A stretch of 64,000 bases of DNA, from sequence record NC_047995.1; one strand, given 5' to 3'. The notes beneath the pieces are model-generated. The model ran no database searches. It was not told the origin of the DNA and saw nothing but the letters and a program-made list of their open reading frames with translations. This document shows, piece by piece, positions 3,685 to 54,781 of the stretch. The position numbers and the translations under genes were made by a program. The first letter of the stretch is position 1, and every line of letters starts with the position of its first letter.

Positions 3685-4506
3685 TTAGTCTCCTACTGCC
3701 GTGTACCAGAAGTCCCAGCCGACAGTGTTAGTGCCGCTAGACTTAATGGTAAAGCCACCTAACAAGGCGTTCTCGTTCATCGCACTGGTGCCGTCCAAGT
3801 TATACAGCGTGAAAGTCTTGGACTGGTTCGTTGCTGCGTTCACAAACGTAATGTGAAGGCTGATACAACGGTTGATGAACGGGCTATTGAAGATAACGTG
3901 CAGCGTGTCAGTTGTCGATTTGTTCACGACTCGACCCATGTTGTGGGTGAAGCCTGTGTTCATATTTCGATTGCTACCAATCCACGCGTTCGCAATAGGT
4001 GCACCAGTTACTGGGTCGAGTGCTTGCGCTGTGCGATATTCATCAATCGCTGCGTCACGCCCTGGACTACCAGTAGGGCCAGTTGCTCCAGTAGGACCGA
4101 CTGAGCCTGTGTTACCTGTAGCACCTACAGGACCTGTGTTACCAGTAGGCCCATTACGACCACGGGGGCCGCGAGGACCGGGACAGCCATCAGTGCCGTC
4201 ACGACCATCGCGTCCGTTAGTACCAGAGAGACCGCGTAAGCCGTCTTTACCCTGTTTCCCTTCACGACCAGACTTGAGCTGATCAGCAGTAGGCAAACCA
4301 ATTACGTTTGACTGACTGCCGTCTGGCCAGATGATTGAAAGTGTACCTGTATTGGTATCGAACTGAGCACCCTGAGCACCTGGAATCTTCGCGGCTTCTT
4401 GCGGGTCAATGAACGCAACAGCCGTGGACGTCTTCTTACCCAGCACTTTACCTACAGGGTCTTTACCACCGTCGATAAGTGATGGGCTAATTCTTGTAAG
4501 AGACAT
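3685..4506 (-). CDS. Collagen-like fibre protein D (273 aa, 24 Gly-X-Y triplets)
   Basis: Uninterrupted GRE..GCP..GRD triplets, preceded by FDTNTGTL..GLPT; globular C-terminal domain. Confidence 0.85.
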   Translation of the reverse strand: MSLTRISPSLIDGGKDPVGKVLGKKTSTAVAFIDPQEAAKIPGAQGAQFDTNTGTLSIIWPDGSQSNVIGLPTADQLKSGREGKQGKDGLRGLSGTNGRDGRDGTDGCPGPRGPRGRNGPTGNTGPVGATGNTGSVGPTGATGPTGSPGRDAAIDEYRTAQALDPVTGAPIANAWIGSNRNMNTGFTHNMGRVVNKSTTDTLHVIFNSPFINRCISLHITFVNAATNQSKTFTLYNLDGTSAMNENALLGGFTIKSSGTNTVGWDFWYTAVGD

Positions 4507-9675: not shown

Positions 9676-10167
9676 TTATGGGCGAACCCAGATAGCACCA
9701 GCAGCAATTTCCTGATCGATAGCAGGATCGGTGTCTTGTACAAACACCATCACTGTACCGGGATTGCCGGGAGCACCAGTAGGACCAATAGGACCCGTCG
9801 GGCCCGCAGGACCGCGATTACCCACGTAGCCTTGCTTACCCTGATTGCCGTCAGTACCACGAGGACCCGGGCAACCATCAGTACCACGACGACCATCACC
9901 GCCCATCAGACCATCAAGACCATCACGACCTGAAGGACCTACGCCACCAGCAGGACCGTAGCCGATACTGTGAATCGTAGGCAGCCCTGAGATCTGGAGT
10001 TTACCGAAGGTGGGAATGTTGATAGCAAGCACACCAGTCTGCTGGTCGAATGAACCGTTAAGAGTGCTGTCATCTTCTGTCGTATCGACGACTAAGCCGC
10101 CTTGGGTAGCTAGTACAGGACCAGATGCGTTGGTCTTGACTAGCGCAATATCAACTTTTTCTACCAT
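9676..10167 (-). CDS. Collagen-like fibre protein C (163 aa, about 22 Gly-X-Y triplets)
   Basis: Gly-X-Y run; FDQQTGVL..GLPT motif; C-terminal GAIWVRP. Confidence 0.85.
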   Translation of the reverse strand: MVEKVDIALVKTNASGPVLATQGGLVVDTTEDDSTLNGSFDQQTGVLAINIPTFGKLQISGLPTIHSIGYGPAGGVGPSGRDGLDGLMGGDGRRGTDGCPGPRGTDGNQGKQGYVGNRGPAGPTGPIGPTGAPGNPGTVMVFVQDTDPAIDQEIAAGAIWVRP

Positions 10168-10176
10168 GATTACTCC

Positions 10177-10809
10177 TTACGGCCAGGTAGTGCCTTGATC
10201 TTTAGTAGGGTCAACCCAGATTGTACCAGCAGCAACAGCGCCAGGCTGAGTAGCACTAACGATGATAGACAGACGACCAGCAGGACCAGCAGCACCTGTT
10301 GCACCAGTAGGGCCTGTAGCTCCAGTCTTGCCTGTAGGGCCTGTGCCGCCACGAGGTCCAGTAGGGCCCGTAGGTCCCATAGGTCCAGTACGACCGTCAG
10401 GTCCAGTAGGTCCGACAGGGCCGGGTAGACCATCACGACCATCAGGTCCTGGGATACCTTGCTCACCATCGGGCCCTACGTTACCGTCACACCCAGGTTC
10501 ACCCGGATTCCCATCGCGACCATCACGTCCGTCTTTACCATCAGCGCCCGTCTCACCTCTGCCCCCTTGACGGCCTTCAGGGATATCAGAAGCAGTAGGG
10601 AAGCCATTCACTTTGACAGTCTGACCGTTAGCGAACTTGAGCGTCAAGATACCGCTAGTGGCATCGAACGAGGAGTCGCCTGTCAGCTCGGAAGGTACAT
10701 CAGCATCAGCAGGACTGACTGTAAGAGTTCCCTTAGAAGCACGAACAGCGGTCGGCGTAGAGGACGAGCCTGCTTGAATGAGGCCGGTACTTACTTTAAT
10801 CAGACTCAT
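10177..10809 (-). CDS. Collagen-like fibre protein B (210 aa, about 34 Gly-X-Y triplets)
   Basis: Gly-X-Y run; [12 protein letters not shown] motif; C-terminal GTIWVDP. Confidence 0.85.
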
Positions 10810-12251
10810 TACTTTTTCTCCGCTTTTGCAACGATATCCGTGTTATGCACAAGCACATCTCCGACGAAGTAGCAGTCGAATGGGTCAACGTCAATATCGA
10901 CCGTCTGCACATTATCGTCAACGCGGCGCATCTCGTAGACAGAGACAGGACCGTTGCGGCCTAGAACAGTTTGACCAGCTTGTACATCACGCGCAGGAAC
11001 ATAGCGCCACGCAGTATCGTCGTAAATCAAAACAGGGTGTTCGTGCGTGAACTTCTGTCCGTTGATAACATAGAAGTGGTCCTCTTGACCGCGAACCAAC
11101 GCTTTAACAGTTGCGTACACAGTTGTGCCTTTGAGGCTAGGCGAAGACCAACGTCTGAACTCTTTAGGCTGATTCGAATAGCCAAGAATAGCATCGCCAA
11201 CGCGAAGTTCTTCTACAGTCTTCGGACCAACGAGAGTCTCAACAACGGAACCAAACACGATACAGCCAGATGTTGCAGTGTTGACAGGGTTACGCGCAAC
11301 GACAGTCAACGCAGAACGCGCTGTAGCTGTAGGACGCGATGTTTGTCCCATGTCAGTTACGACGCAGGTGATGGTGCCTTTGATAATACGATCAGCACCA
11401 AGACCAAGCCGCAGGTAGAAGTTAACAATGCAGGTGTTTGTCTCTGTAGCTTCGAGAGTTACACCTTCTGTGGTAGTGACTGTCCATTTATACTTATATG
11501 GACCGACACCGCCACGCGCATTGACAGGTAGATATGCCAGTGACGTAAACACATCAGAGCCTTGCACTGTACGTTGACCTACCAGGTACAGACTCGACAC
11601 TGACGCAGCAAGAGGTGATATTGTAGGAAGCGGTGGTGCTGGCGTAACGTTCGTCGTAGGGTATAACCACACGAACACTTTACTATCCAGAGGTTGAACA
11701 GACGATAGCACTGCTGTAGTGATTGGCGCTGGGCCGGTTGCACCCGTAGCACCTGCGATACAGCTTGGACCGTCATTGCCCCGCGGGCCGATTGGACCTG
11801 TAGGGCCTGTATTACCGTCAGGGCCTGTAGGACCATCGGGTCCCATACGACCCGTATCGCCGTCAGGACCATCTTCGCCGTCTCGGCCAGGGTCTCCGAC
11901 AGGACCTGTCTTACCTCTGTTACCCACACCGCCAGGACAACCAACGCGACCAGTTTCTCCATCACGACCGTTTCGCCCGTCACGACCAGGAGAGCCTGGA
12001 GCGCCTCGACGCCCAGACTTACCTTCACCGAACATGGAAACAGTCGGAAGCCCAGGGACGTTTAGCACCTCCCCGTTCTTCTTGATGAAAACCAATACAC
12101 CTGTCTTGCTGTTAAATCTTACGCTGGCGAGCTGTGTCAGTGTTGCCACATCAGAGGCTTCGAATTTAACACCTCCGTCAACTCCGACTAAGGATTTACC
12201 TTCATCGTTCTGCGTTGTTTCGACTTGCGAAAGTTTTAACAGTGTTGTCAT
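10809..12251 (-). CDS. Collagen-like fibre protein A with a C-terminal Hint (intein-like) domain (480 aa)
   Basis: 29 Gly-X-Y triplets, an interruption, then 3 more; a beta-rich domain; then a Hint domain. Confidence 0.85.
10842..11264 (-). other. Hint autoprocessing domain (141 aa, no endonuclease)
   Basis: Block A CIVFGSVV (Cys1), block B THEHP (TxxH), block [14 protein letters not shown], terminal VHN followed by Thr+1. Confidence 0.85.
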
Positions 12252-21382: not shown

Positions 21383-21405
21383 GATTATTCTCCTCTGTTA
21401 GACAC

Positions 21406-21413
21406 AAATTAGC
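21406..21413 (-). promoter_or_regulatory. Putative late promoter GCTAATTT
   Basis: Between a terminator and the PAAR gene, 24 nt before its ATG. Confidence 0.65.
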
Positions 21414-21431
21414 TTGTTACGAGACAGAAAC

Positions 21432-21457
21432 AAAAACGGGCAGCCTAATGGCCACCC
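21432..21457 (-). terminator. Intrinsic terminator closing the long non-coding region
   Basis: GGGTGGCC-ATTA-GGCTGCCC followed by GTTTTT on the minus strand. Confidence 0.8.
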
Positions 21458-21493
21458 AGTTTCTGTACGCTTGGATTTTGTGTCGTCATTCCC

Positions 21494-21652
21494 TTACGCC
21501 CGATGCAAGTGCCTATCAGCTTTCGCTGTTAAGCCGGAATGAGTGTTCGAGAGTGAAGGTACACCTGGTACCGACAGAAGGTGACTCTCGGACCATGCAA
21601 GCAATAGACCAAGCATCGCTATTGCAAGCATCGACACTAAGAACAAAAGCAT
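21494..21652 (-). CDS. Putative 52-aa hydrophobic small protein inside the candidate RNA
   Basis: AAGGAG 7 nt before ATG; MLLFLVSMLAIAMLGLLLAW (20 hydrophobic residues), then a polar tail ending ..RHLHRA*. Confidence 0.45.
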   Translation of the reverse strand: MLLFLVSMLAIAMLGLLLAWSESHLLSVPGVPSLSNTHSGLTAKADRHLHRA

Positions 21653-21711
21653 GTTTCGCTCCTTGTGTCATACTTTAAAGGACTACGTTTGATCGACGGT
21701 TACTTTATTCT

Positions 21712-21740
21712 GCTCGTCGCCTAAACTCCACTTGAGTATC
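21712..21740 (-). repeat. Copy 2 of the motif GATACTCAAGTG-N6/7-GGCGACGAGC
   Basis: 22 identical nt shared with 22106-22133; enclosed by an ATTCTG/CAGAAT stem. Confidence 0.85.
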
Positions 21741-22105
21741 AGAATGTTTCTCTGTCTTTACCGCCTACGTTGCGGCAAGCCGCGCACGACACTCACACAT
21801 CAAGGACACTCGGCGGAAGGAGGAAGTTCCGATTGCCCTAACAGCGTAAGTGAAGCGAAGGAGGTCCCGTATCGGTGATCTGCAGGGGTTCACGCACTTT
21901 TAACATTCGCTTCTTTGTGCGTTAAACCTTCGTGGACCCGAATGCCCTGCTAATCATTCCACGAAGATATTGCACACCCTATTGTGAACGAGGGGGTCGA
22001 GCTATGGCATCACGTCAACAGCAGTGGACGGCGGACACACTCCATTGCAATCTGTTAAGGGCAGAATGCAACAGGCTGTGAACAGCTTTGGCCAAATGTA
22101 GAGTC

Positions 22106-22133
22106 GCTCGTCGCCCAACATCACTTGAGTATC
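22106..22133 (-). repeat. Copy 1 of the motif GATACTCAAGTG-N6/7-GGCGACGAGC
   Basis: 22 identical nt shared with 21712-21740; enclosed by an AATGTAGA/TCTACATT stem. Confidence 0.85.
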
Positions 22134-22725
22134 TCGTCTACATTCGTTTACTCCCTGAAAGCATCACTAGGCAGCTTACCTGTGATACCCATGAGGACCT
22201 GCGGATGTTTATCACTCTCAGACTCTTAGTTCCCTGCATGTGAAAACAACACGTTGAGTCGTCCGCTGGATGACGTGCTGTTTATTCTCAATCCGCTTAG
22301 GCAGCGAAAGGCACATATCAGATAATGATGGAACTGTCATGAAGGAATCCCTGGAGGTCATCGCTTCCCAATGCACACAGGGTGAAAGCCTATGCACATC
22401 AGGCAGCGTCTGCTGCGATACTGCTATCCCTATTAGACTGCCCACAGCGTTGAGTTTTCCGCTCCAACAGTCTACGTGCCTGGAAGGTATATGCCGTGCC
22501 AAGTATGTATCAGCATGGTTCCTGCTGGGCCTTGAGAGCGTCAGCGACAGAGCATATATTCATCACGTGGGTGCCGGGGTTGTCCTCACGATTACAGAGC
22601 GCAAACTCAAACCGGCTGGAGGCCTACACAAACCGCATGTAGGTTTCACATCAAGAGAAGCCCGCTATGAGTCCTCTCCCTTGAGACATATTGATATTAC
22701 TATCTGCAATTTTTATTTACAGATT

Positions 22726-43483: not shown

Positions 43484-45514
43484 TTAGAAGGTCAGACGTT
43501 TCAGTTTGTCGTCGAAGGATGAGCCAGTGGAAGCTGAACTCTGGGATTGAACAGACTCGGTGTCCTGAGACAGGAGTTCAGCAGCGGTAGGCTGTTTAAC
43601 CGGAGCGGTCGTAACCTGCTGTTGAACAACCGACGCGCGTTCAGCAGTAACAGTACCTGCGGCAGCGTCGATAGACTCAGAAATTTCGTTCTGTGCGACT
43701 TCGGACTTGCTCATAAGGTCCATCGCTTTTGACAGCGAGGTAGTGAGATAGTCTTTGCCGTGGGCAATGAATGCACGTTCAATCAGAGGGCGTGAATCTT
43801 TAACGCCAGCAGCAGACAGTGAGCCTACAATGCTATCAACGATTGGGTTGCGTACATCACCCCAGAAGTTTTTGGTGACACCCAGCTGGGAAGCGGACAG
43901 AGCAGCAACCAGACGCTCGCTGTAAGCAGCATTAGCGTTTTCGATGGTTGAAGTAACGTTCGCAGTAGCTTCGCTAATACGAGCATCAGATTCTGCCACC
44001 AGCAGTTTGTCTACCGGCATTTCGAACTGGTGCGGCATAAAGCCGAACGAATCACAAGTACCAGCAACGCCCGTCTGATTAAGAGAGTGCGATACGGCAC
44101 GGATGAAATTATCAGTATCGAAAGATTTCACCGCATTTTCTTCGCCGACTGCGTTAGATACAGAAGCGAGAGTAGCGCGGGCCAGAGGTTCGCCGTCATA
44201 GAACATGTGAACGGTGTTCACTTTGCCTTTGGCGCGGCTCAGGCTGACGAGAGACGGGTCCAGCGTACCGTGTTGTGCGGTAGCGGTAGACAGACTATCG
44301 AAGGTGCGACTGACGGCGTTGCTTTCAGAATCGAAATCGTCTTCGTCATCGAGGTCGAGGTCGTCTTCTTCCAGTTCTTCTTCGTCATCCAGATCTTCGT
44401 CATCCAGATCTTCGTCGCCGTCAGAGCTAGACTCAGAATCAAAATCTTCATCGTCCAGGTCTTCGTCATCCAGATCTTCGTCGAAGTCTTCGTCGTCGAG
44501 ATCTTCATCGAAGTCCTCGTCGTCTTCTTCGTCGTCATCAGAACTGGATTCAGAGTCGAAGTCTTCGTCGAAGTCTTCGTCATCCAGATCATCTTCATCC
44601 AGATCTTCGTCGTCCAGGTCGTCTTCTTCGTCGATATCATCTTCATCATCGTTAGATGATTCAGAGTCGAAGTCTTCATCGTCCAGATCTTCGTCGTCAT
44701 CGAGATCGTCTTCTTCAACGATATCAATGTCGCTGTCATCGCCAGACTGGGATTCGATAGGTTCATCGATCAGCGCGGCAGAGCAGTGCGCACAGAACAC
44801 AGGTTCTTCATCAGAAGACACGGTGAACGGCTGTTCGCAGTTAGCGGAGCAGCTATAGATATGCGCTTCAACTTCATCGCCAGCAGACGACAGAGCGGCT
44901 ACAGCTTCTGGCGCTTCCTGCGGTTCACATGCAGTAACTTCCTGGCCGGTGTACGGGTCGAAGTTAGCGGCAGTCGCAGCATTAAAGCTACCAGTACCAG
45001 ACAGCGCGGTAAACGTGTGTGCGTTGCTCAGAGCCAGCGCAAAGTTGCGTTGTGCAGCTTCGGCAGTCTCGCCCGTTGCAACCAGACCTTCGTGCTCAAT
45101 TTGCTCGTCAGCAGAAGCTGATTCAGCCAGGAACTGAGTAACACGCTCGTCGGTGATTTCGGACAGGTCAGCAGAGCACGATGGGCAGGAGCCCTGAACC
45201 AGTGCGGAGCTGTCAGAGATAACGTGGCAACCACAACCATCGAGACAGATGGTGTAGTGAGCTTTCACGTCACCCGCAGATGACTGCGACACGGTTTCGG
45301 CTTTCTCAACCAAATCAGGATGCTCTACCAGCAGTTCTTCACCGCCAGTTGGATTGTAAAGGTCCGCGCCGCTCTGCGAAGCAAAGCCTACACCGGCAGT
45401 ATTCCCGAAAATCATCAGGTTCTGACCAAGTGCAGTACGGCGAAAGTTCTCTACTGCCTGATTATGGTTTTGACCGACACACAGGATACCCGCGAGTTGG
45501 GTAATCTTTGGCAT
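43484..45514 (-). CDS. Probable scaffold/prohead core protein with two Cys clusters and a long acidic tract (about 676 aa)
   Basis: Position in the head module; CLDGC..CPSC and CSANC..CAHC; about 125-aa D/E tract; ATG at 45514 with GAGG. Confidence 0.55.
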   Translation of the reverse strand: MPKITQLAGILCVGQNHNQAVENFRRTALGQNLMIFGNTAGVGFASQSGADLYNPTGGEELLVEHPDLVEKAETVSQSSAGDVKAHYTICLDGCGCHVISDSSALVQGSCPSCSADLSEITDERVTQFLAESASADEQIEHEGLVATGETAEAAQRNFALALSNAHTFTALSGTGSFNAATAANFDPYTGQEVTACEPQEAPEAVAALSSAGDEVEAHIYSCSANCEQPFTVSSDEEPVFCAHCSAALIDEPIESQSGDDSDIDIVEEDDLDDDEDLDDEDFDSESSNDDEDDIDEEDDLDDEDLDEDDLDDEDFDEDFDSESSSDDDEEDDEDFDEDLDDEDFDEDLDDEDLDDEDFDSESSSDGDEDLDDEDLDDEEELEEDDLDLDDEDDFDSESNAVSRTFDSLSTATAQHGTLDPSLVSLSRAKGKVNTVHMFYDGEPLARATLASVSNAVGEENAVKSFDTDNFIRAVSHSLNQTGVAGTCDSFGFMPHQFEMPVDKLLVAESDARISEATANVTSTIENANAAYSERLVAALSASQLGVTKNFWGDVRNPIVDSIVGSLSAAGVKDSRPLIERAFIAHGKDYLTTSLSKAMDLMSKSEVAQNEISESIDAAAGTVTAERASVVQQQVTTAPVKQPTAAELLSQDTESVQSQSSASTGSSFDDKLKRLTF
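44340..44720 (-). repeat. Low-complexity coding repeat (GACGA/TGAAGA) encoding the D/E tract with four DFDSES units
   Basis: Repeated gtcttcgtcatccagatc-like units on the plus strand. Confidence 0.85.
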
Positions 45515-45559
45515 GGTTAAAACCCTCATAGAATTTTTAGTCGTTGAATCGACAGGTTA

Positions 45560-45592: not shown

Positions 45593-46789
45593 TTAAACTT
45601 TTCTGCTATCAATGTCAGCTTGTGGAATATAGCGATTTTCGAAGTATTTATTAACCACTTCTACTCCGTTTAACGAGTAAACGTTACGCATACTATCACC
45701 CCAAACCATTAGCTCTGCAAGTGTCGCAAAGTGTTCCGTAGGCACGCTTTTCATGGCCCGGGCATCGAGTGAATCCGGGTGGATTTTCTTGCCGCGAATG
45801 GCCTGATCGAACTTCATACGGTCAACGTTTCGTATCATCGTATGGTCCACAAAGTGTGCCAATTCGTGGGTCATTGCATGGCCAAATGAACGGCTGTTAT
45901 AACCGCCAAACAAATCAACCAACTGCTTCGGACTCATTGAAATTACACCATACAGGAATCCTGACACGGTATATGTAGCAATATGCGAGCCACCAACATC
46001 GTTGCCCTGTTTAACGATACCCACATACAAACGTTTGAATGGCAGGGGCACATTAAGACCGATGCCAGGCATAACGTTTTCCTGAATGTCTTTGAGCACA
46101 TAATCAGGAGGGCTGATACCATCAAGCAGAATCTTACGACCCCCAATAATGAGGTCATCAGCGCCCAATACTTCAAGGTGCACGTTACCGCATTTAGGTA
46201 TCTTCTGGATAGCGTAGTTGTTTGCCGTACCACCAGGATAGATAGCGTTAGCATAGATAAGAGGCTCAGTGGTACCGAACGCTTTCATATCCATCATACG
46301 CCTAGCAGCCGCCTTTCGAGCAGCAGCATCCATATTTGGATCATCCAAGATTTCTTTAGGCAGCGAAGGCTGCATATCAGTAGAACTCGGACGGCGCAGA
46401 ATAGGTGCTTTTGGCACAGGTGTTGATTCTGCTGGTGATGCAGGCTGCTCGGGTTCTGGTTGCGCTTTGACAGGCACTGGCTTTGGTTTAGGCTTAGGTT
46501 CCGCCATTTTCTTCTTCTCCTCGTAAGGAGTGAAGTCAAAGTCAGGCTTAAAGAGGGCGTCAGGCTTAGCAGTGAATGGGCGACTATTCTGGATGATGTT
46601 GTCGCCGTCTTCTCCACTGATTGCATAAGCCATGTCGTATTTAGGATGGGCTATGTAGTACAGGTCGTCACTCACCTTGAGCAGACCCACAACCTCGCGT
46701 GTATGCAGATGCACACCGTTTGAGATCATGGCGTCTGGCCCTAGATAACGAAAGTACGAATAGTCTACGATGAATAGACCTTCGATCAT
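45593..46789 (-). CDS. Head-module protein with an N-terminal paralogous domain and a C-terminal zincin-like HExxH domain (about 398 aa)
   Basis: AMTHELAHFVDH plus downstream PTEHFATL; start at 46789 in a TAATG overlap. Confidence 0.6.
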   Translation of the reverse strand: MIEGLFIVDYSYFRYLGPDAMISNGVHLHTREVVGLLKVSDDLYYIAHPKYDMAYAISGEDGDNIIQNSRPFTAKPDALFKPDFDFTPYEEKKKMAEPKPKPKPVPVKAQPEPEQPASPAESTPVPKAPILRRPSSTDMQPSLPKEILDDPNMDAAARKAAARRMMDMKAFGTTEPLIYANAIYPGGTANNYAIQKIPKCGNVHLEVLGADDLIIGGRKILLDGISPPDYVLKDIQENVMPGIGLNVPLPFKRLYVGIVKQGNDVGGSHIATYTVSGFLYGVISMSPKQLVDLFGGYNSRSFGHAMTHELAHFVDHTMIRNVDRMKFDQAIRGKKIHPDSLDARAMKSVPTEHFATLAELMVWGDSMRNVYSLNGVEVVNKYFENRYIPQADIDSRKV

Positions 46790-47568
46790 TACGCCATCCT
46801 TAACAGGTGTTCTTTGTACGTTGCCGCACACGCGAACGCCGGATCATCAACCGAGCTACATTCGAAGCCAGTCAACATCTTGCAGTCACGATACACCAGA
46901 CGGCCTGTACGACCATCGAGGTACGTTGGCTTGTTGAATGCAGTATGCGAACAGAAGTTACGATGACGAGGAGTAACCAACTGACCACAGATGCTGCACT
47001 TGTAGGCCTTGTACGTTGTGCCTTTCGAATACGTGTTAAGCTCACCACTCAGGATGCGGTCACAACGTTCCTGACAACGTGTACGGTCGAACGCTAACAG
47101 CAGAGTAAGACGCGCATGGTTGCCACGGAAGTTCTGGAGCTTAGACAGATTCGAGTCAAAGATCATGCCCATTGCTTGGCGATAATCTTTATTGTTGTGC
47201 TCGATAAACGTAGGCTTACCGACGAACGTCTGATACGCAAGACGGCCTTGGTCAGGGTTAAACGTCAACCACTCTTCCAGGCTGAATGCGTCGCCGTTCG
47301 TGTTAGGCAGCTCGGTGATGTTTACCGGTACAGGCACGATAACGTAGTCACGGATATTGCGTGAGGTGTTGTACTGCTCGGCTGCTTTCGACAACCACAC
47401 GTTCACGTCCAGATTGAATGAGCCTGACTGAATGCCTAAGCGCGAAGGGTCAACACGAATAGACTTAGCTGTTTGGCTAACGTCTTCTTTGTGCATATCA
47501 ATCGCGCCTAGTCCGACGAGGCCCATGTCCGAGGTATCAAACGACTCGGAACGAATGGACTGATCCAT
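46789..47568 (-). CDS. Prohead (capsid maturation) protease, HK97/herpes-like fold with a Cys cluster (about 259 aa)
   Basis: PTFIEH, YSKG..CSICG..CSH, FECSSVDDPAF; ATG at 47568 with GGAG. Confidence 0.75.
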   Translation of the reverse strand: MDQSIRSESFDTSDMGLVGLGAIDMHKEDVSQTAKSIRVDPSRLGIQSGSFNLDVNVWLSKAAEQYNTSRNIRDYVIVPVPVNITELPNTNGDAFSLEEWLTFNPDQGRLAYQTFVGKPTFIEHNNKDYRQAMGMIFDSNLSKLQNFRGNHARLTLLLAFDRTRCQERCDRILSGELNTYSKGTTYKAYKCSICGQLVTPRHRNFCSHTAFNKPTYLDGRTGRLVYRDCKMLTGFECSSVDDPAFACAATYKEHLLRMA

Positions 47569-48002: not shown

Positions 48003-48878
48003 TTAACCTCGCAGCGCACCACGCGCCCATGACTTAGCGAGAGCCAGAGTCATACGGCTTGGGTTTTGCAATTTGACTTCACCCTTATGGACGGCAGTGA
48101 ACGGTTCATGCGCGTTCTCTCCGCGACCAGAACGATACGCTGCTTCATTGAAGCCGTCGAATAACGTTACGACCCAGCCAGTGGATTTGTCAGAGCATTC
48201 ACCGCAGGCTTTGTCCCAGCTGATCTTACCGCAGACACGGCCACCAGCGTTCACCGCATAGCTTACCTGCTCAGTGCCTTTGTACACGTCAGAGGCTTTC
48301 AGCGTTTTGAACGTGACACGCGCAGCAGACTCAGAGCGAGGCATCATCTTCTCTTTCAATGCTTCAATGTCGAGTGAAGACCAGAACGATTCAAACAGCG
48401 CAGCGAACTTCTGCTCAATAGGCAGGTCGATAGCGTTGATCTGTGCGATGGTGCTGGAGCTATCGTTAAGCACACGGTTGATGAAGTAACCGCCGAGGAT
48501 GACTGGCATCTGCGTACCTTGATCACCAGCAGTTAGGCCCGCGCGTTTGGCGTAGATCTCACACATCCCGATAGCAAGTCGCGCCAGTGTCTGGAACGTT
48601 TGCTTCTCGGTGCTGTTAGCAATCTCAGTGTAGATGCGACTGGCGATTGACGCAACAACCGTACGCTTCGCCACACTCAGGATATCTTCAGGCGTGATAG
48701 ATTGTCCGAGTTTCTTTTTGGCAGCAAGCTCGAACGCATTAATCAGGCTTGCTTTGTTCGCTGGCGTCAGCGACTCGCTCAACTTGATTGTTGTCTGCTC
48801 CGAACTGCTCACCAGGCTCGGCTCCGGAGTTTTCGTCAGACGACGCACTCCCTTCGTTGTCAATCGGGCTACTGTCAT
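48003..48878 (-). CDS. Hypothetical, probable head protein (291 aa)
   Basis: AGGA before ATG; 5' end overlaps the glycosyltransferase gene; S-x-S motifs near the N-terminus. Confidence 0.65.
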   Translation of the reverse strand: MTVARLTTKGVRRLTKTPEPSLVSSSEQTTIKLSESLTPANKASLINAFELAAKKKLGQSITPEDILSVAKRTVVASIASRIYTEIANSTEKQTFQTLARLAIGMCEIYAKRAGLTAGDQGTQMPVILGGYFINRVLNDSSSTIAQINAIDLPIEQKFAALFESFWSSLDIEALKEKMMPRSESAARVTFKTLKASDVYKGTEQVSYAVNAGGRVCGKISWDKACGECSDKSTGWVVTLFDGFNEAAYRSGRGENAHEPFTAVHKGEVKLQNPSRMTLALAKSWARGALRG

Positions 48879-49983
48879 TTGTTTGTTCCTGAGTAGGAGC
48901 CTGTAGATACTGCAACAGGCCAGAGTTCATAATCTCCTCGTTAACGTCAAGGCCACGCAGCGCAGCCAGGTTAGCGAGGTAATTGAGAGCAGGTTCAACC
49001 ATACCCAGATTGCGGCAGCCCCAGTATGCTAGGTCATAGCACAGGTCCAAGTTAATAGGAGTCTGGTCGAACAAGAAACTTTTTGGATTCTGCTTAGACG
49101 CTTCAATCCCTTGAATAGCTTGACCGATTGCATTGATGTTATCGCCACGGCGGTAGAAGATATCGGCCAGCATCGCGTAGCATTCAATGCGATCAGGACG
49201 AAACGCGATAGCACGATAGCAAGCGCACACAGCTTCCTGAATGAATCCCTGCTTGAACGCAGCCTTAGCAAGTTCGATGTTGGCCAACGCAACGTAGTCA
49301 GGCCACTTAGCGATACCAGCCAAGCGATCAACTTCACGACGCGCATCTTCCAGCAGGTCAGGACGTTCGTAGTACGCAACAGAGTAGCAAAGTTCACGCG
49401 CATAATAGAAACTGCAACGATCATCATGCGGATAGTCACCAACGTCCAGACCAAGCTCCAGCAGATAGTTACGTGCTTTGTCATGGTCAGGATAGTGGTC
49501 AGTTGCGAACGGCGCTTCAACCGATTTGAGTTGTTGTCCAGGCTTACGCGAGGACAGGACTTCGTGCGCACGATACTTCCAGAAATAAGAGCGACGACGA
49601 TACGCTTTCATCTGCTGGTAGTGACTGTCCCCGTTACGCATCAGAATCCAAACAGCTTCTGCTTTCTTGATGCCTTGCGTACTGCGTAGCGCCTCAACCC
49701 AATTAGGGTCATCGAAGCGCTCGTCAATATCAAGCCACACTACAAGGTCGTCTTCCGAGAAAGGCGTAGCGGCCAGTTCACGGCTTGCACCTAAGTTACG
49801 CTCTGGTGATACGTCGAACGTGTGATAGATGTTAGGATGAACGAACGCCGAGATGATGTTCGTGGTCTGGTCTTCGCTGCCCGTGTCAACGATACTGATA
49901 GCATCAGCACAGGCAACGTGTTTCAACCACTCACCGATATTCTTTTCTTCATTGCGACAGATAGCCGCTACGCAGATTCTCAT
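48739..49983 (-). CDS. Family 2 glycosyltransferase with C-terminal TPR-like repeats (414 aa)
   Basis: ICRNEEKNI, IVDTGSEDQT, WLDIDE (DxD), YRAHE, then helical repeats (FYYAREL, AIAFRPDRIECYAMLA). Confidence 0.9.
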   Translation of the reverse strand: MRICVAAICRNEEKNIGEWLKHVACADAISIVDTGSEDQTTNIISAFVHPNIYHTFDVSPERNLGASRELAATPFSEDDLVVWLDIDERFDDPNWVEALRSTQGIKKAEAVWILMRNGDSHYQQMKAYRRRSYFWKYRAHEVLSSRKPGQQLKSVEAPFATDHYPDHDKARNYLLELGLDVGDYPHDDRCSFYYARELCYSVAYYERPDLLEDARREVDRLAGIAKWPDYVALANIELAKAAFKQGFIQEAVCACYRAIAFRPDRIECYAMLADIFYRRGDNINAIGQAIQGIEASKQNPKSFLFDQTPINLDLCYDLAYWGCRNLGMVEPALNYLANLAALRGLDVNEEIMNSGLLQYLQAPTQEQTNDSSPIDNEGSASSDENSGAEPGEQFGADNNQVERVADASEQSKPD

Positions 49984-49998
49984 GTTTGCCTCATTGGG

Positions 49999-50916
49999 TT
50001 ATATTAAAACGTTACCGCTATCCCACCACTGCTTACCGTAGATATCAGACACACGGTACTCAAGGATGAGAGGCTGGTCCAGGTCGACTTGTGTTATATA
50101 GCGCTGTAAGTAAGGACTCCACACTGTTTTCTCCTCAGTGTAAAGCCGTATCTCCAGTTCTATGTCGCCTTGTGAGTTCTTCGGTACGAACGGATGCGAA
50201 TAGTCGCCATCGAAACCCGAACCGATAGAGTCGTCGAAGTATGTGTACGCACGAACTTCCTCACCGCTATTGATGATGGTCGGTGCGTATACCTGACGAT
50301 TGTAATACGAGGTGTAGTCGGCAACGGTTGATTGCCAAATGACACGGCGCTTGTAGATACGCGTTACGCCTTTGCTGTCTGTCTCTGCGCGGTACTGGTT
50401 GTAGTACCAGCTTATCTGCGCAAACTTAACAGGCTTCAATTGCTCTTGGCCAGTAGCGTATTTCATGAACGGCTTCGCAGTGAAACGATGGTATGTCTTC
50501 TGCGTGTTCAGGCGATACAGCAGGACCTGATACGTGTACCACTGATAAACATCAAAGGTAATCGTGCCTGAGTCCGATTGCTGTGTCCCGTTGGTCAGGA
50601 TGTAAGAGAAACAGTCTGTGCCAACGTAACCGCTTCGTGGGTTATAGAGGAACGCATCGTTGAAATAGTTCAGACGCACAGTACCTACCATAGGGTCATT
50701 GACCTTAATAGCAGAAAGGCGCCAACCCCTTTGAGCCGGCACCTTATCGAGTACACCCTCTGTCGGGCTGTGCAACGTCACTTCATCACGAGCGCCTTGT
50801 AAGATCTTTTCGAGCGGAATCTCAGTTTGACCTGAGTTACGCACTCGCACCGTAAAGTTCGGAGCCACTGGTTTGTAGTTGCGCCAGTAGTCGAACGTAC
50901 AAGGCAAAGAGAGCAT
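49999..50916 (-). CDS. Virion protein with a cadherin-like/Ig (Big_9-type) domain (305 aa)
   Basis: GTVRL..FLYNPRSGYVGTDCFSYILTNG..SGTITFDV. Confidence 0.7.
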   Translation of the reverse strand: MLSLPCTFDYWRNYKPVAPNFTVRVRNSGQTEIPLEKILQGARDEVTLHSPTEGVLDKVPAQRGWRLSAIKVNDPMVGTVRLNYFNDAFLYNPRSGYVGTDCFSYILTNGTQQSDSGTITFDVYQWYTYQVLLYRLNTQKTYHRFTAKPFMKYATGQEQLKPVKFAQISWYYNQYRAETDSKGVTRIYKRRVIWQSTVADYTSYYNRQVYAPTIINSGEEVRAYTYFDDSIGSGFDGDYSHPFVPKNSQGDIELEIRLYTEEKTVWSPYLQRYITQVDLDQPLILEYRVSDIYGKQWWDSGNVLI

Positions 50917-52903: not shown

Positions 52904-54781
52904 TTAGCTGGCGATAGGGTCTTTGTTGACCGGGTAGTCTTCGGTCATGTCTAACACGCGATTGAACAGCTTAGGCGCCATATCTTTCACATGCTCGGCA
53001 TAATCAAAGAGGTTCTGTTTACGCGCACGGTTCACGCGGACCTGACGTACTTCATCAGGGCTGTTGGTGATATCGTACAGCGTATAGATAACGATGTTAT
53101 CCGAAGCATTGTGAGTGCTAACACGAACCACGACCCAATCACGTTTGAGCTTCGCATCTGCTTTGAACTGCAACACGTCACCTTCTTCTGCCTCTTCTGC
53201 GCGAGCACTTGGAGTAGACTGGTTAGCGGCTGCAATCTTCTTGGCAGTCTCTTTCGATTCCTGCTCGGCGGCAGCAACGTCAGAGTCCTGGTCTTCTTCA
53301 GGGTCAACTTCGTCTACAGCGTCGGCGGCGTCAGAGGATTCATCTTCCTCTTCTTCCTCGTCTGCTCCGTCTTCACCTTCTGGATCAGCTCCTTCGTCGT
53401 CAGCATCGGCATCATCCACGGATTCGTCGTCGGACTCGTCATCCCCATCTTCTGCATCAGCAGCGTCTGGATCGCTATCGTCAGTATCTTCTTCCGCATC
53501 AGGGTCCTCCTCTTCCTCGACTTCTTCCTCTTCGACTTCTTCCACCTCAGAAGGTTCTTCTTCCTCTTCTTCGGGATCAGCTTCGACAGGCTTCTTGCCT
53601 TTAACCTTAGCACGAACTTTAGGCGGCGCTACATCTTCTTCGTCGTCTTCTGGTTCGTCAATGTCAGACAGGTCAAGCGAAGGTTCTTCGTGGTCCTGTG
53701 AATCATCGCCACCAAACAGAGAGCCGATGGAGTCTTCGATGTTGTACATGTCACCTGCGAACGGGCTACGAGACAGGACGTCTTCCAGCTTCTGCTCGTC
53801 AAAGTCCAGTTCGATATCGAGTTCTTCGATTGCGTCGTCCAGTTCTTCATGCTCGATAACACGCACACGCTTACCACGTTTGTCGATACCATCTGCATAG
53901 ACAGTACGGACTTCTGCTTTAGGTGCTTCAATCTCGCCGCTCTTAACCTTGCTGCGTAGATCTTTCATCTCAGCAGAACGTTGGGCAGCGGTCTTACGTG
54001 CTTCTTTCTGGAGTTCTTTGCGTTGCTGCTTCTGCTCCAGAATCTTAGCGTTGTTGGCGAGGCGTACTGCTTCTTCCTCCTCCAACTGAGAACGCTTGCG
54101 GTGACGACGCACTTGCTTGCGATATGCCTTGAGCGTATCAACGTCCACTTCACCTTTCGGCCAATCATTGAAAGGCAGAATGTTGGTGTCGTGAACAAGC
54201 AAGTCGTATTGAGCGTCATCGACTTTGATGAACAGACCGTCGGTGTTAATGACTACACCGCCTTTGCCTTGACGCAAGTAGCGCACACCAATCATGTCGT
54301 TCTTGTATAGCTTGAGCATACCCTTAGAGGTCTTCACAGGGTATTCCATGCTCGGCACCATACGCCACTGATAGTTGTCGAAGTTAACGCCATACACAGC
54401 CTCAGACTTCACAGACTTAGGAGCGAAACGAGCGGCGTCGAACTGCACACGATTGATCTGGCGCTGCATTGTCTTAGCACCAGCGGTTTTCGTGCGTGAT
54501 TCACGATTGACAACATCAGGCACCTTACGCAGCTTGGAACTATGCTCCATCAGGAACAGACCAGTGGTCTTATCGAGAGGGAAGTCAACGTGAGGCATAT
54601 CAGCAAAAATGAGCGTGTAGCGTCCGCCATTACGCAGCGGGAGAATGCCGAAAGTATCTCCTTCACGAATCATACGCTTATGAGTTCGTTGGGATACTTC
54701 TTTTCCGCGTGAGCCTTTATACTTCATCCACGCGTACTTCGTTACTGCATCGTTATGAGATGCGGACACGGAAAGTATCAT
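52904..54781 (-). CDS. Probable internal head protein with two paralogous domains, a coiled coil and a long acidic tract (625 aa)
   Basis: WMKYKG..IREGDTFGI..RYTL; second copy ..LYKNDMIGV; D/E tract; N-terminal LSVSAS. Confidence 0.65.
   Translation of the reverse strand: MILSVSASHNDAVTKYAWMKYKGSRGKEVSQRTHKRMIREGDTFGILPLRNGGRYTLIFADMPHVDFPLDKTTGLFLMEHSSKLRKVPDVVNRESRTKTAGAKTMQRQINRVQFDAARFAPKSVKSEAVYGVNFDNYQWRMVPSMEYPVKTSKGMLKLYKNDMIGVRYLRQGKGGVVINTDGLFIKVDDAQYDLLVHDTNILPFNDWPKGEVDVDTLKAYRKQVRRHRKRSQLEEEEAVRLANNAKILEQKQQRKELQKEARKTAAQRSAEMKDLRSKVKSGEIEAPKAEVRTVYADGIDKRGKRVRVIEHEELDDAIEELDIELDFDEQKLEDVLSRSPFAGDMYNIEDSIGSLFGGDDSQDHEEPSLDLSDIDEPEDDEEDVAPPKVRAKVKGKKPVEADPEEEEEEPSEVEEVEEEEVEEEEDPDAEEDTDDSDPDAADAEDGDDESDDESVDDADADDEGADPEGEDGADEEEEEDESSDAADAVDEVDPEEDQDSDVAAAEQESKETAKKIAAANQSTPSARAEEAEEGDVLQFKADAKLKRDWVVVRVSTHNASDNIVIYTLYDITNSPDEVRQVRVNRARKQNLFDYAEHVKDMAPKLFNRVLDMTEDYPVNKDPIAS

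What the first reader, a model, noticed from the sequence alone, without database searches (positions are those of the whole stretch)
48739..49983. GT2-TPR glycosyltransferase that may glycosylate the phage's own collagen fibres
Seen: a GT2 catalytic domain plus TPR-like repeats among structural genes, and four collagen genes whose C-halves are rich in Thr at Y (GPT, GAT, GNT, GKT). Known: TPR repeats imply protein substrates; spore collagen-like BclA proteins are O-glycosylated, in C. difficile depending on the glycosyltransferase SgtA; and glycosylated virions are known in some mycobacteriophages. Inference: protein O-glycosylation of Gly-X-Thr repeats, which could stabilise hydroxyproline-free triple helices or shield the virion.
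Basis: partly seen in the sequence, partly recalled or inferred. Interest (0 to 1): 0.72.

Follow-up and report, generated by a model that had tools for sequence, protein, structure and literature searches.

The report
Phage enzyme that likely sugar-coats collagen fibres
A jumbo Erwinia phage encodes a soluble sugar-adding enzyme whose nearest relatives in bacteria and in many unrelated phages sit right next to collagen-like fibre genes, so it most likely attaches sugars to the phage's own collagen-like tail fibres, a virion modification not yet described for phages.

Summary
The window is Erwinia phage vB_EamM_Alexandra, bases 62001-126000. The ORF at 48739-49983 (-) is gp148, labelled "beta-1,4-glycosyltransferase" in RefSeq.

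- gp148 has a GT2/GT-A domain with intact DTGS, DxD and HE motifs.
- This is followed by about five TPR-like helical hairpins and a disordered acidic tail. There is no membrane segment.
- Four collagen-repeat genes lie 37-45 kb away. Thr at the Y position is enriched in their C-terminal halves (23/56 against 3/54).

The interpretation gains strong but indirect support:
- The best fold matches are peptide and protein glycosyltransferases (SunS/ThuS, GmaR).
- Of the 80 closest cellular relatives, 43 lie within 2 kb of a Gly-X-Thr collagen gene. That is the arrangement of C. difficile SgtA-BclA3, where O-GlcNAc transfer to Thr has been shown in vitro.
- A phage-only profile aligns full-length with these collagen-linked enzymes (hhalign E 1.6e-43).
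- In 49 of 80 unrelated viral contigs such a GT lies within 10 kb of a collagen-like gene, in the three loci examined a tail-fibre gene. In 31 it is within 2 kb, always on the same strand and often overlapping.

Caveats: in this phage the GT is not adjacent to the fibre genes, and no glycan has been observed. I rate it a new variant of a known kind, interest about 0.7.

The parts
48739..49983 (-). gp148, 414-aa soluble GT2-TPR glycosyltransferase (whole gene, stop codon included)
   Evidence: ORF. RefSeq CDS HOT49_gp148. PHROG 13126 at E 1.8e-113. No transmembrane stretch: maximum 19-aa hydropathy 0.81.
49489..49983 (-). GT-A (GT2) catalytic domain, residues 1-165, with DTGS 33-36, D85-x-D87 and H140-E141
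   Evidence: Pfam PF00535 at 25.9 bits. The motifs are invariant in the phage lineage and also in the collagen-linked cellular enzymes. GmaR GT domain matches at E 9.4e-17 with the lineage profile. The model shows a beta/alpha fold.
48925..49464 (-). TPR-like helical repeat domain, residues 174-353 (ten helices)
   Evidence: Consensus TPR and OGT TPR sequence matches for residues 232-300. AlphaFold helices at pLDDT above 90. Foldseek matches to OGT, MamA and CTPR. The domain aligns with the TPR domain of the collagen-linked enzymes up to column 350.
48742..48894 (-). Disordered acidic C-terminal tail, residues 364-414
   Evidence: pLDDT below 50. 13 Asp/Glu against 2 Lys/Arg, with 10 Ser/Thr. 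Present only in the Erwinia/Dickeya/Yersinia-type relatives; the last residues are conserved among them.
3685..4506 (-). gp106, collagen-like fibre protein (proposed acceptor); collagen run 4054-4269, 24 triplets, Thr at Y 7/12 in the C-terminal half
   Evidence: Pfam Collagen 53.5 bits. RefSeq 'tail fiber protein'.
9676..10167 (-). gp110, collagen-like fibre protein; collagen run 9751-9957, 23 triplets, Thr at Y only 2/12 in the C-terminal half
   Evidence: Pfam Collagen 34.7 bits. RefSeq 'tail fiber protein'.
10177..10809 (-). gp111, collagen-like fibre protein; collagen run 10270-10575, 34 triplets, Thr at Y 10/17 in the C-terminal half
   Evidence: Pfam Collagen 55.3 bits. Homologues occur in exactly the same phage genera as the GT.
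10809..12251 (-). gp112, collagen-like virion protein with a C-terminal Hint-like domain; collagen run 11763-12023, 29 triplets, Thr at Y 4/15 in the C-terminal half
   Evidence: Collagen 50.7 bits; PT-HINT and Hint_2 below cut-off. RefSeq 'virion structural protein'.
48003..48782 (-). gp147, conserved downstream neighbour of unknown function; its start overlaps the end of the GT gene (context, not shown to be a functional partner)
   Evidence: RefSeq coordinates. PHROG 31537. The order GT, two small genes, head protease is kept in PaBG, and the surrounding order is kept in Sen-NF.
49999..50916 (-). gp149, conserved upstream neighbour with a bacterial Ig (Big_9) domain (context)
   Evidence: Pfam Big_9 at 26.5 bits. 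PHROG 36743. Same position in Sen-NF and in metagenomic relative L006.

Best explanation
gp148 is a soluble, cytoplasmic, metal-dependent GT-A (GT2) glycosyltransferase. Its C-terminal TPR-like domain recruits a protein substrate. It belongs to the same superfamily as the protein and peptide glycosyltransferases SgtA, GmaR and SunS/ThuS.

The most likely acceptors are Thr (and perhaps Ser) side chains at the Y position of Gly-X-Thr triplets in the phage's four collagen-like fibre proteins: gp106, gp111, gp112 and, less so, gp110. The enzyme would use a host nucleotide sugar, UDP-GlcNAc or a UDP-hexose by analogy. It would modify the chains in the infected cell before or while they trimerise and are mounted on the virion.

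Shown here: the domain architecture, the intact catalytic motifs, homology to collagen-linked enzymes, and the gene linkage in relatives.

Inferred: the acceptor in this phage, the sugar, the timing and the benefit (helix stability, protease or antibody shielding, or receptor interaction).
For: (1) Architecture and fold.
- GT2 domain plus about five TPR-like hairpins, with no membrane segment.
- The best full-length fold matches are the peptide glycosyltransferases ThuS and SunS (E 2e-12 and 8e-12).
- The best sequence match among solved structures is the flagellin O-GlcNAc transferase GmaR (E 1.8e-5 single sequence; 9.4e-17 with the lineage profile).

(2) A characterised analogue. C. difficile SgtA is 358 aa, with GT-A then TPR domains, encoded next to bclA3. 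In vitro it puts beta-O-GlcNAc on Thr of GPT collagen repeats (PMC7157674).

(3) The 80 closest cellular relatives of gp148.
- 45 have a Gly-X-Y run of at least 8 triplets within 10 kb, and 43 within 2 kb.
- Collagen-coding bases fall from 176 per kb in the first kb of flank to 0-5 per kb in most bins beyond 3 kb.
- Thr occupies 62% of the Y positions.
- 37 of 53 enzymes of SgtA size are collagen-linked.
- 11 of the 14 best hits are linked.
- Linked enzymes score higher with a jumbo-phage-only profile: median 90 against 70 bits, p = 2.5e-5.

(4) Profile comparison. The phage-only profile against the collagen-linked cellular profile gives hhalign probability 100%, E 1.6e-43, 322 columns, covering gp148 residues 1-350. 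DTGS, DxD, HE and a later His are invariant in both sets.

(5) Independent phages.
- 49 of 80 IMG/VR loci with such a GT have collagen-like genes within 10 kb.
- 31 have them within 2 kb, all on the same strand; 17 have a gap of 50 nt or less, or overlap.
- L090, L167 and L108 are tailed-phage tail modules in which a PHROG-13126 GT abuts a collagen-like tail fibre gene.
- Two records of the annotated phage collection outside the lineage carry a gp148 homologue: Actinomycetia phage DSL-LC01 and a 5-kb faecal phage contig. Both have collagen genes in the same block.

(6) Within the lineage. The GT and the collagen fibre genes are both kept from Alexandra to PaBG and Lu11, where GT identity falls to about 25-30%.
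Against: - In this phage and its whole lineage the GT gene is not next to the fibre genes. It lies 37-45 kb away, in a block conserved with the DNA ligase and the head protease.
- Co-presence inside one lineage is confounded by common descent.
- The Alexandra fibres are less Thr-rich than the collagen partners of the relatives: 24% of Y positions overall and 41% in the C-terminal halves, against 51-62%. gp110 has hardly any Thr at Y.
- About 45% of the closest cellular relatives have no collagen gene nearby, so the family also has other substrates.
- The sequence of SgtA itself could not be retrieved for a direct comparison.
- No proteomic or glycan data exist for this phage in the papers I could read.
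Confidence: 0.55

Rival explanations
1. gp148 is a protein glycosyltransferase, but its acceptor is another protein. Candidates are a head or other virion protein encoded in its own gene block (as capsid glycosylation is proposed for some mycobacteriophages), or a host protein such as flagellin (as for GmaR).
For: - The GT gene is embedded in the conserved block ligase, gp149, GT, gp147, gp146, head protease, then the major capsid protein. That order persists in PaBG, Sen-NF and metagenomic relatives.
- GmaR is the best sequence match among solved structures.
- About 45% of the close cellular relatives lack a collagen neighbour.
- Capsid glycosylation is inferred for mycobacteriophages that carry GT genes (PMC11256854 abstract).
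Against: - No relative examined here showed a conserved link to capsid or flagellin genes.
- The one recurrent neighbour across bacteria and independent phages is a collagen-like gene.
- Gene order in jumbo phages is a weak guide to functional partners.
Confidence: 0.25
2. gp148 acts on a non-protein acceptor. Either it modifies host lipopolysaccharide, exopolysaccharide or cell wall to block superinfection, or it glycosylates phage DNA to escape restriction. These are the two roles usually assumed for phage glycosyltransferases.
For: - The RefSeq and PHROG label is 'beta-1,4-glycosyltransferase', in the category 'moron, auxiliary metabolic gene and host takeover'.
- There is a weak PHROG 841 (GtrB-like) hit at E 6e-5.
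- TarS and RmlT (teichoic-acid GT2 enzymes) appear among the weaker fold matches.
- Papers on other phages default to these roles (PMC10202952 and PMC7029224).
Against: - gp148 has no membrane segment, whereas GtrB-type enzymes are membrane-bound, by my recollection.
- No GtrA or GtrC partners are annotated nearby.
- The TPR domain and the top full-length fold matches point to peptide or protein acceptors.
- No base-hypermodification genes were seen in the window's annotation.
- The gene linkage of relatives is to collagen genes, not to polysaccharide loci.
Confidence: 0.1
3. gp148 serves mainly as a non-enzymatic binding or regulatory protein through its TPR domain, as GmaR doubles as an anti-repressor. 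Alternatively it is an assembly chaperone for fibres.
For: GmaR is described in the PDB as an antirepressor as well as a GT (entry 7x9r). TPR domains are general protein-binding modules.
Against: All nucleotide-sugar and metal-binding motifs (DTGS, DxD, HE, His163) are invariant across a lineage that has diverged to 25% identity. That pattern argues for retained catalysis.
Confidence: 0.05

Closest known systems
SgtA / BclA3 of Clostridioides difficile (spore-surface collagen O-GlcNAc transferase)
   Same: - Same architecture and size class: GT-A domain then TPR, 358 aa against 363 aa plus a 51-aa tail.
- The acceptor type matches what is proposed here: Thr in Gly-Pro-Thr collagen repeats (PMC7157674).
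- gp148 is a full-length homologue of the bacterial enzymes that share SgtA's architecture and gene context.
   Different: - gp148 is phage-encoded, in a Gram-negative host that makes no spores.
- The proposed target is a virion fibre, not an exosporium protein.
- The gene is not adjacent to the collagen genes in this phage.
- Sugar and linkage are unknown.
- Direct comparison with the SgtA sequence was not possible.
GmaR of Listeria monocytogenes (flagellin O-GlcNAc transferase and anti-repressor)
   Same: Best sequence match among solved structures for the GT domain. It is also a GT2-plus-helical-repeat protein acting on a protein.
   Different: No flagellin or MogR-type partner is apparent here. 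GmaR is longer. The match covers the GT domain only.
SunS / ThuS glycocin S-glycosyltransferases (SunS is SPbeta-prophage encoded)
   Same: Best full-length fold matches: GT-A plus a TPR-like substrate-recognition domain acting on a peptide. Weak but significant profile similarity, E about 1e-6.
   Different: They glycosylate Cys or Ser of small bacteriocin precursors and, by my recollection, are encoded with the precursor and export genes. No such genes flank gp148.
Virion glycosylation in mycobacteriophages
   Same: Phage-encoded glycosyltransferases thought to decorate the phage's own structural proteins (PMC11256854 abstract; further details from my own knowledge).
   Different: As far as I know the targets there are capsid and tail-tube proteins and the enzymes are of other types. 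No collagen repeats or TPR domains are involved.
Glycosylated collagen-like fibre proteins of giant viruses (Mimivirus)
   Same: A virus that encodes both collagen-like proteins and the enzymes that glycosylate them. This is the topic of PMC4691112; the details are from my own knowledge.
   Different: By my recollection it is a eukaryotic virus using hydroxylysine-linked sugars and a different enzyme family.

Membership tests
Glycosyltransferase family 2 (GT-A fold) | Match to the Pfam Glycos_transf_2 model above its curated cut-off | tested here: met
   PF00535 scores 25.9 bits against a cut-off of 23.3, residues 5-105. The margin is small but is backed by PHROG 13126 at E 1.8e-113.
Glycosyltransferase family 2 (GT-A fold) | DxD metal and nucleotide-sugar binding motif, and a Rossmann-like alpha/beta fold | tested here: met
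   D85-I-D87 and DTGS 33-36 are invariant in 22 relatives. The model has alternating strands and helices at pLDDT above 90. Fold matches include SunS, ThuS, TarS and RmlT.
SgtA-type collagen-repeat O-glycosyltransferases | N-terminal GT-A domain followed by C-terminal TPR repeats, about 360 aa, soluble | tested here: met
   SgtA is described as 358 aa, GT-A at residues 1-260 and TPR at 262-358 (PMC7157674).
SgtA-type collagen-repeat O-glycosyltransferases | Sequence homology to SgtA itself | not tested
   The SgtA sequence was not retrievable: it was not among the 120 listed hits. The proxy tested was full-length homology to 27 collagen-linked bacterial enzymes of the same architecture, hhalign E 1.6e-43.
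SgtA-type collagen-repeat O-glycosyltransferases | Gene adjacent to a Gly-X-Thr collagen-like gene | tested here: not met
   In Alexandra the collagen genes lie 37-45 kb from gp148. The feature is met in 43 of the 80 closest cellular relatives and in 31 of 80 viral relatives.
SgtA-type collagen-repeat O-glycosyltransferases | Transfers beta-GlcNAc from UDP-GlcNAc to Thr or Ser of collagen repeats | not testable with these tools
   Biochemical property. Known for SgtA only.
GmaR-type flagellin O-GlcNAc transferases | Homologous GT domain | tested here: met
   22ao_A matches at E 1.8e-5 (single sequence) and 9.4e-17 (lineage profile).
GmaR-type flagellin O-GlcNAc transferases | Acts on flagellin and binds the MogR repressor | not testable with these tools
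   No flagellar or MogR-like gene is annotated in the window.
Glycocin S-glycosyltransferases (SunS/ThuS) | Similar overall fold: GT-A plus a helical peptide-binding domain | tested here: met
   Foldseek E 2e-12 to 1e-11, TM about 0.5 over 374-382 columns.
Glycocin S-glycosyltransferases (SunS/ThuS) | Encoded with a glycocin precursor peptide and its export and disulfide genes (as I recall the system) | tested here: not met
   The neighbours are a DNA ligase, an Ig-domain protein, two unknowns and the head protease.
GtrB-like O-antigen conversion glucosyltransferases | Membrane-anchored enzyme with GtrA and GtrC partners (as I recall the system) | tested here: not met
   Maximum 19-residue hydropathy is 0.81, so no membrane helix. 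There is only a weak PHROG 841 hit, E 6e-5. No Gtr partners are annotated.
Collagen triple-helix repeat proteins (the four proposed acceptors) | Uninterrupted Gly-X-Y repeats passing the Pfam Collagen cut-off | tested here: met
   23-34 triplets each. PF01391 scores 34.7-55.3 bits against a cut-off of 27.2.

The most novel reading that the evidence does not exclude
O-glycosylation of collagen-like tail fibres by a dedicated GT2-TPR enzyme would be a widespread, so far unrecognised maturation step of tailed-phage virions. It would occur in many unrelated phage lineages and in the 'hairy' jumbo phages. It would be evolutionarily continuous with the SgtA-BclA spore-surface system of Firmicutes. 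Many phage 'auxiliary' glycosyltransferases now read as DNA- or LPS-modifying would in fact be virion glycosylation enzymes.
Probability: 0.45. Interest if true: 0.8.

Novelty: new variant of a known kind. Interest (0 to 1): 0.7.

Why it matters
Glycosylation of Thr in collagen repeats is a known way to stabilise triple helices that lack hydroxyproline. On C. difficile spores it masks the peptide backbone from antibodies (PMC3368898 and PMC7157674).

If phage fibres are coated in the same way, the sugar layer becomes part of the surface that meets the host receptor, proteases and antibodies. That bears on host recognition and particle stability, and on how therapeutic or biocontrol phages, including fire-blight phages of this group, are seen by immune systems.

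It would also re-assign a large set of phage 'auxiliary' glycosyltransferases, PHROG 13126 and its relatives. The gene pair GT2-TPR plus Gly-X-Thr collagen gene would then serve as a simple genomic marker for glycosylated virions.

Tried and rejected
- NCBIfam gave nothing near any cut-off.
- Gene context of two bacterial relatives. Anaerofustis P0225 turned out to lie beside a BclA-like gene. Clostridia P0209 did not: its neighbour is a non-collagen surface-type protein.
- Papers on this phage group hold no mention of the enzyme, of collagen or of glycans (PMC6143709 and PMC7412058). The PaBG virion proteome lists only 14 bands and does not help. The Y3 paper is not held.
- A literature search for phage collagen fibres together with a glycosyltransferase found only papers that assign phage GTs to DNA or LPS modification.
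- An attempt to retrieve C. difficile SgtA with a profile search failed. The family is so large (7901 hits below 1e-30 among the 8000 candidates scored) that it was not in the listed 120.
- Promoter and terminator scans around the gene gave no more sites than shuffled sequence, so no separate transcription unit can be claimed.
- No tRNA genes are in the window.
- DNA glycosylation and LPS conversion were considered and set aside: no membrane segment, a TPR domain, and collagen-linked relatives.
- Co-distribution of the GT and the fibre genes inside the jumbo lineage is perfect. I rejected it as independent evidence because both are lineage core genes.
- I did not scan the rest of the Alexandra genome for further glycosyltransferases or sugar-nucleotide genes.
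Full report
WHAT AND WHERE. The window is 100% identical to Erwinia phage vB_EamM_Alexandra (NC_047995.1), bases 62001-126000. This is a 266-kb jumbo myovirus of the genus Alexandravirus. It belongs to the lineage that includes Y3, Dickeya AD1 and JA phages, Yoloswag, PaBG and Lu11. Members imaged by EM have been called 'hairy Myoviridae' (PMC6143709; PMC7412058). The finding's ORF, 48739-49983 on the minus strand (414 aa), is RefSeq gp148, 'beta-1,4-glycosyltransferase'. That name is inherited from PHROG 13126 (E 1.8e-113) and does not rest on any experiment I could find.

The catalytic domain:
- Pfam Glycos_transf_2 passes its cut-off narrowly (25.9 against 23.3 bits, residues 5-105).
- In an alignment of 22 relatives down to 25% identity, several motifs are invariant: DTGS (33-36), D85-x-D87, H140-E141 and others.

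The repeat domain:
- An AlphaFold model built on that alignment is confident (pLDDT 86).
- It shows an alpha/beta domain (1-165), ten helices (174-353) and a disordered acidic tail (364-414).
- No Pfam TPR model reached E 0.01. However, residues 232-300 match consensus TPR proteins (E 1e-10) and the TPR domain of human OGT, and the helical domain superposes on OGT and MamA.
- There is no hydrophobic stretch able to span a membrane.

The collagen genes:
- A six-frame scan finds exactly four long Gly-X-Y runs in the window, in gp106, gp110, gp111 and gp112, with 24, 23, 34 and 29 triplets. All pass the Pfam Collagen cut-off.
- Each run has a charged N-terminal half (many G-R-D and G-K-D triplets), one central Cys, and a C-terminal half where Thr sits at Y.
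- Thr at Y is 23/56 in the C-terminal halves against 3/54 in the N-terminal halves (p = 1e-5).
- The bias is strong in gp106 and gp111, moderate in gp112 and weak in gp110.

'Among structural genes' needs a qualifier. gp148 sits in the block DNA ligase, gp149 (Ig-like), GT, gp147, gp146, head protease, then the major capsid protein. It is 37-45 kb from the fibre genes.

WHAT KIND OF ENZYME.
- Over its full length the model is most similar to ThuS and SunS (Foldseek E 2e-12 to 1e-11). These glycocin glycosyltransferases recognise a peptide through a TPR-like domain.
- By sequence, the best solved relative is the GT domain of GmaR, the Listeria flagellin O-GlcNAc transferase (E 1.8e-5; 9.4e-17 with a profile of the phage lineage).
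- A profile search of 1.84 billion representatives shows that gp148 belongs to a very large family: 67,730 hits at E of 0.001 or below and 1,833 at 1e-30 or below. Many members are about 360 aa and match end to end.

THE DECISIVE CONTEXT. The first such bacterial relative I looked up is a 358-aa enzyme of Anaerofustis stercorihominis. It lies immediately upstream of a BclA-like protein made almost entirely of G-P-T and G-A-T triplets. That is the arrangement of C. difficile SgtA, which is 358 aa, has GT-A then TPR domains, and is encoded directly upstream of bclA3. Recombinant SgtA adds beta-O-GlcNAc to Thr (and Ser) of peptides from the GPT collagen region (PMC7157674).

I then fetched the 80 loci of GTDB genomes that best match gp148 and scanned them:
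- 45 have a Gly-X-Y run of at least 8 triplets, and 43 have one within 2 kb of the enzyme gene.
- Collagen-coding bases amount to 176 per kb in the first kb of flank and 0-5 per kb in most bins beyond 3 kb. The far flank is an internal control drawn from the same genomes.
- Thr fills 62% of the Y positions.
- Among enzymes of SgtA size, 37 of 53 are collagen-linked.
- 11 of the 14 best hits are linked.
- Linked enzymes score higher against a profile built from jumbo-phage sequences only (median 90 against 70 bits, p = 2.5e-5).
- The three sequences nearest the jumbo clade (L010, L011, L012) are all linked.
- In L010 a BclA-like gene is followed by two tandem enzymes. Each is 28-29% identical to gp148 over residues 2-335.

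A profile of the phage lineage alone aligns with a profile of 27 collagen-linked bacterial enzymes at hhalign probability 100%, E 1.6e-43. The alignment spans 322 columns and covers both domains. The two sets share the same invariant catalytic positions.

INDEPENDENT PHAGES. A scan of IMG/VR with the collagen-linked profile returned 80 viral loci:
- 49 hold collagen-like genes within 10 kb.
- 31 hold them within 2 kb, every one on the same strand as the enzyme gene. In 17 the gap is 50 nt or less, or the genes overlap.

Three loci examined in detail are tail modules of ordinary tailed phages:
- L090: two tail-fibre genes, a collagen-like tail fibre, then a PHROG-13126 enzyme whose start overlaps the fibre gene's stop.
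- L167: a head-tail adaptor/portal-like gene upstream, then the enzyme and a 1639-aa collagen-like fibre, with a 4-bp overlap.
- L108: central fibre J, an ORF, the enzyme, then a 1068-aa collagen-like fibre.

In the annotated phage collection, 67 records hold a gp148 homologue. Sixty-five belong to the jumbo lineage, which also holds the fibre homologues, with identical counts by host genus. The other two are Actinomycetia phage DSL-LC01 and a 5-kb faecal phage contig. Both have GPT-rich collagen genes in the same gene block. PaBG and Lu11, the deepest branches of the lineage, keep four or five collagen fibre genes with the same layout, and keep the enzyme.

MECHANISM, WITH ITS STATUS.

Shown:
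- gp148 is a soluble GT-A enzyme with intact donor and metal motifs and a protein-binding repeat domain.
- It is homologous end to end to enzymes whose genes are coupled to Gly-X-Thr collagen genes in bacteria and phages.
- One member of that architecture and context (SgtA) is biochemically an O-GlcNAc transferase for Thr in collagen repeats.

Inferred:
- In infected Erwinia cells, gp148 uses a host UDP-sugar to glycosylate Thr at Y positions, mainly in the C-terminal halves of gp106, gp111 and gp112, before or during trimerisation.
- The sugars stabilise the hydroxyproline-free helix or cover the fibre surface. Thr glycosylation as a collagen stabiliser is cited in PMC3368898, and masking of BclA3 epitopes in PMC7157674.
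- Sugar identity, linkage and any extension are unknown. The label 'beta-1,4' has no support.

WEAKNESSES.
- The link in this particular phage is co-presence, not adjacency, and inside one lineage that is confounded by descent.
- The gene's conserved company is the head-morphogenesis block, so a head protein remains a credible acceptor.
- The Alexandra fibres are less Thr-rich than the typical partner collagens.
- Nearly half of the close bacterial relatives have no collagen neighbour.
- The viral background frequency of collagen fibre genes was not measured with a matched control. The same-strand, overlapping arrangement is the argument there.
- SgtA's own sequence could not be compared.

RIVALS. 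These are another protein acceptor, whether head, other virion or host protein (0.25); a non-protein acceptor such as LPS, EPS or DNA (0.10); and a mainly non-catalytic role (0.05). See the rival entries for the evidence on each.

NOVELTY. The enzyme class and the chemistry are known from spores (SgtA-BclA3). Phage-encoded virion glycosylation is proposed for mycobacteriophages. The open literature I could search holds no link between phage collagen-like fibres and a phage glycosyltransferase; such enzymes are routinely read as DNA or LPS modifiers. I therefore rate it a new variant of a known kind, supported by comparative genomics only.

Noticed in passing
window 10809-12251 (-), gp112: This collagen-repeat virion protein ends in a Hint/intein-like domain (PT-HINT and Hint_2, both just below cut-off). 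The counterpart in phage NCTB is annotated 'intein domain protein'. This suggests self-cleavage of a fibre protein.
   Followed up: partly
window 4054-4269, 9751-9957, 10270-10575, 11763-12023; also L008 and L009: Every collagen run has a single Cys near its middle, between the charged N-terminal half and the Thr-rich C-terminal half. It is conserved in PaBG and Lu11 and could form an inter-chain disulfide knot.
   Followed up: no
window 43484-45529 (gp143) and 52904-54781 (gp151): Both proteins carry very long Asp/Glu-rich tracts. gp143 is labelled 'ATPase' through PHROG 20988 but has no Pfam hit. gp144 (45593-46831) and gp151 both begin with a KMPT-N domain.
   Followed up: no
window 48742-48894 (-), tail of gp148: A 51-residue disordered acidic tail whose last residues are conserved among Erwinia, Dickeya and Yersinia phage relatives. 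It is absent from shorter relatives. Its purpose is unknown.
   Followed up: partly
window 21383-22725: A 1.3-kb stretch between the PAAR gene and gp118 has no annotated CDS. It holds only short ORFs on the gene strand and no tRNA.
   Followed up: partly
L010 2-2898: In a Bacillota MAG contig, a BclA-like collagen gene is followed by two tandem GT2-TPR genes. The second matches PHROG 13126 at E 6e-110 and is followed by a PHROG 19509 gene, so this contig end may be phage-derived.
   Followed up: partly
L090 9455-11068: In this viral contig the collagen-linked glycosyltransferase is fused to an N-terminal methyltransferase-like domain.
   Followed up: no
L170 (Actinomycetia phage DSL-LC01) 6535-13077 and 18805-20941: One block holds two collagen genes, a hypothetical gene, a 'tryptophan halogenase' and the GT2-TPR gene. 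A UDP-galactopyranose mutase and a second glycosyltransferase lie nearby, hinting at a longer glycan.
   Followed up: no
window 4730-7606 (-), gp108: This large fibre-module protein has a borderline ILEI domain hit, 27.0 bits against a cut-off of 27.0.
   Followed up: no
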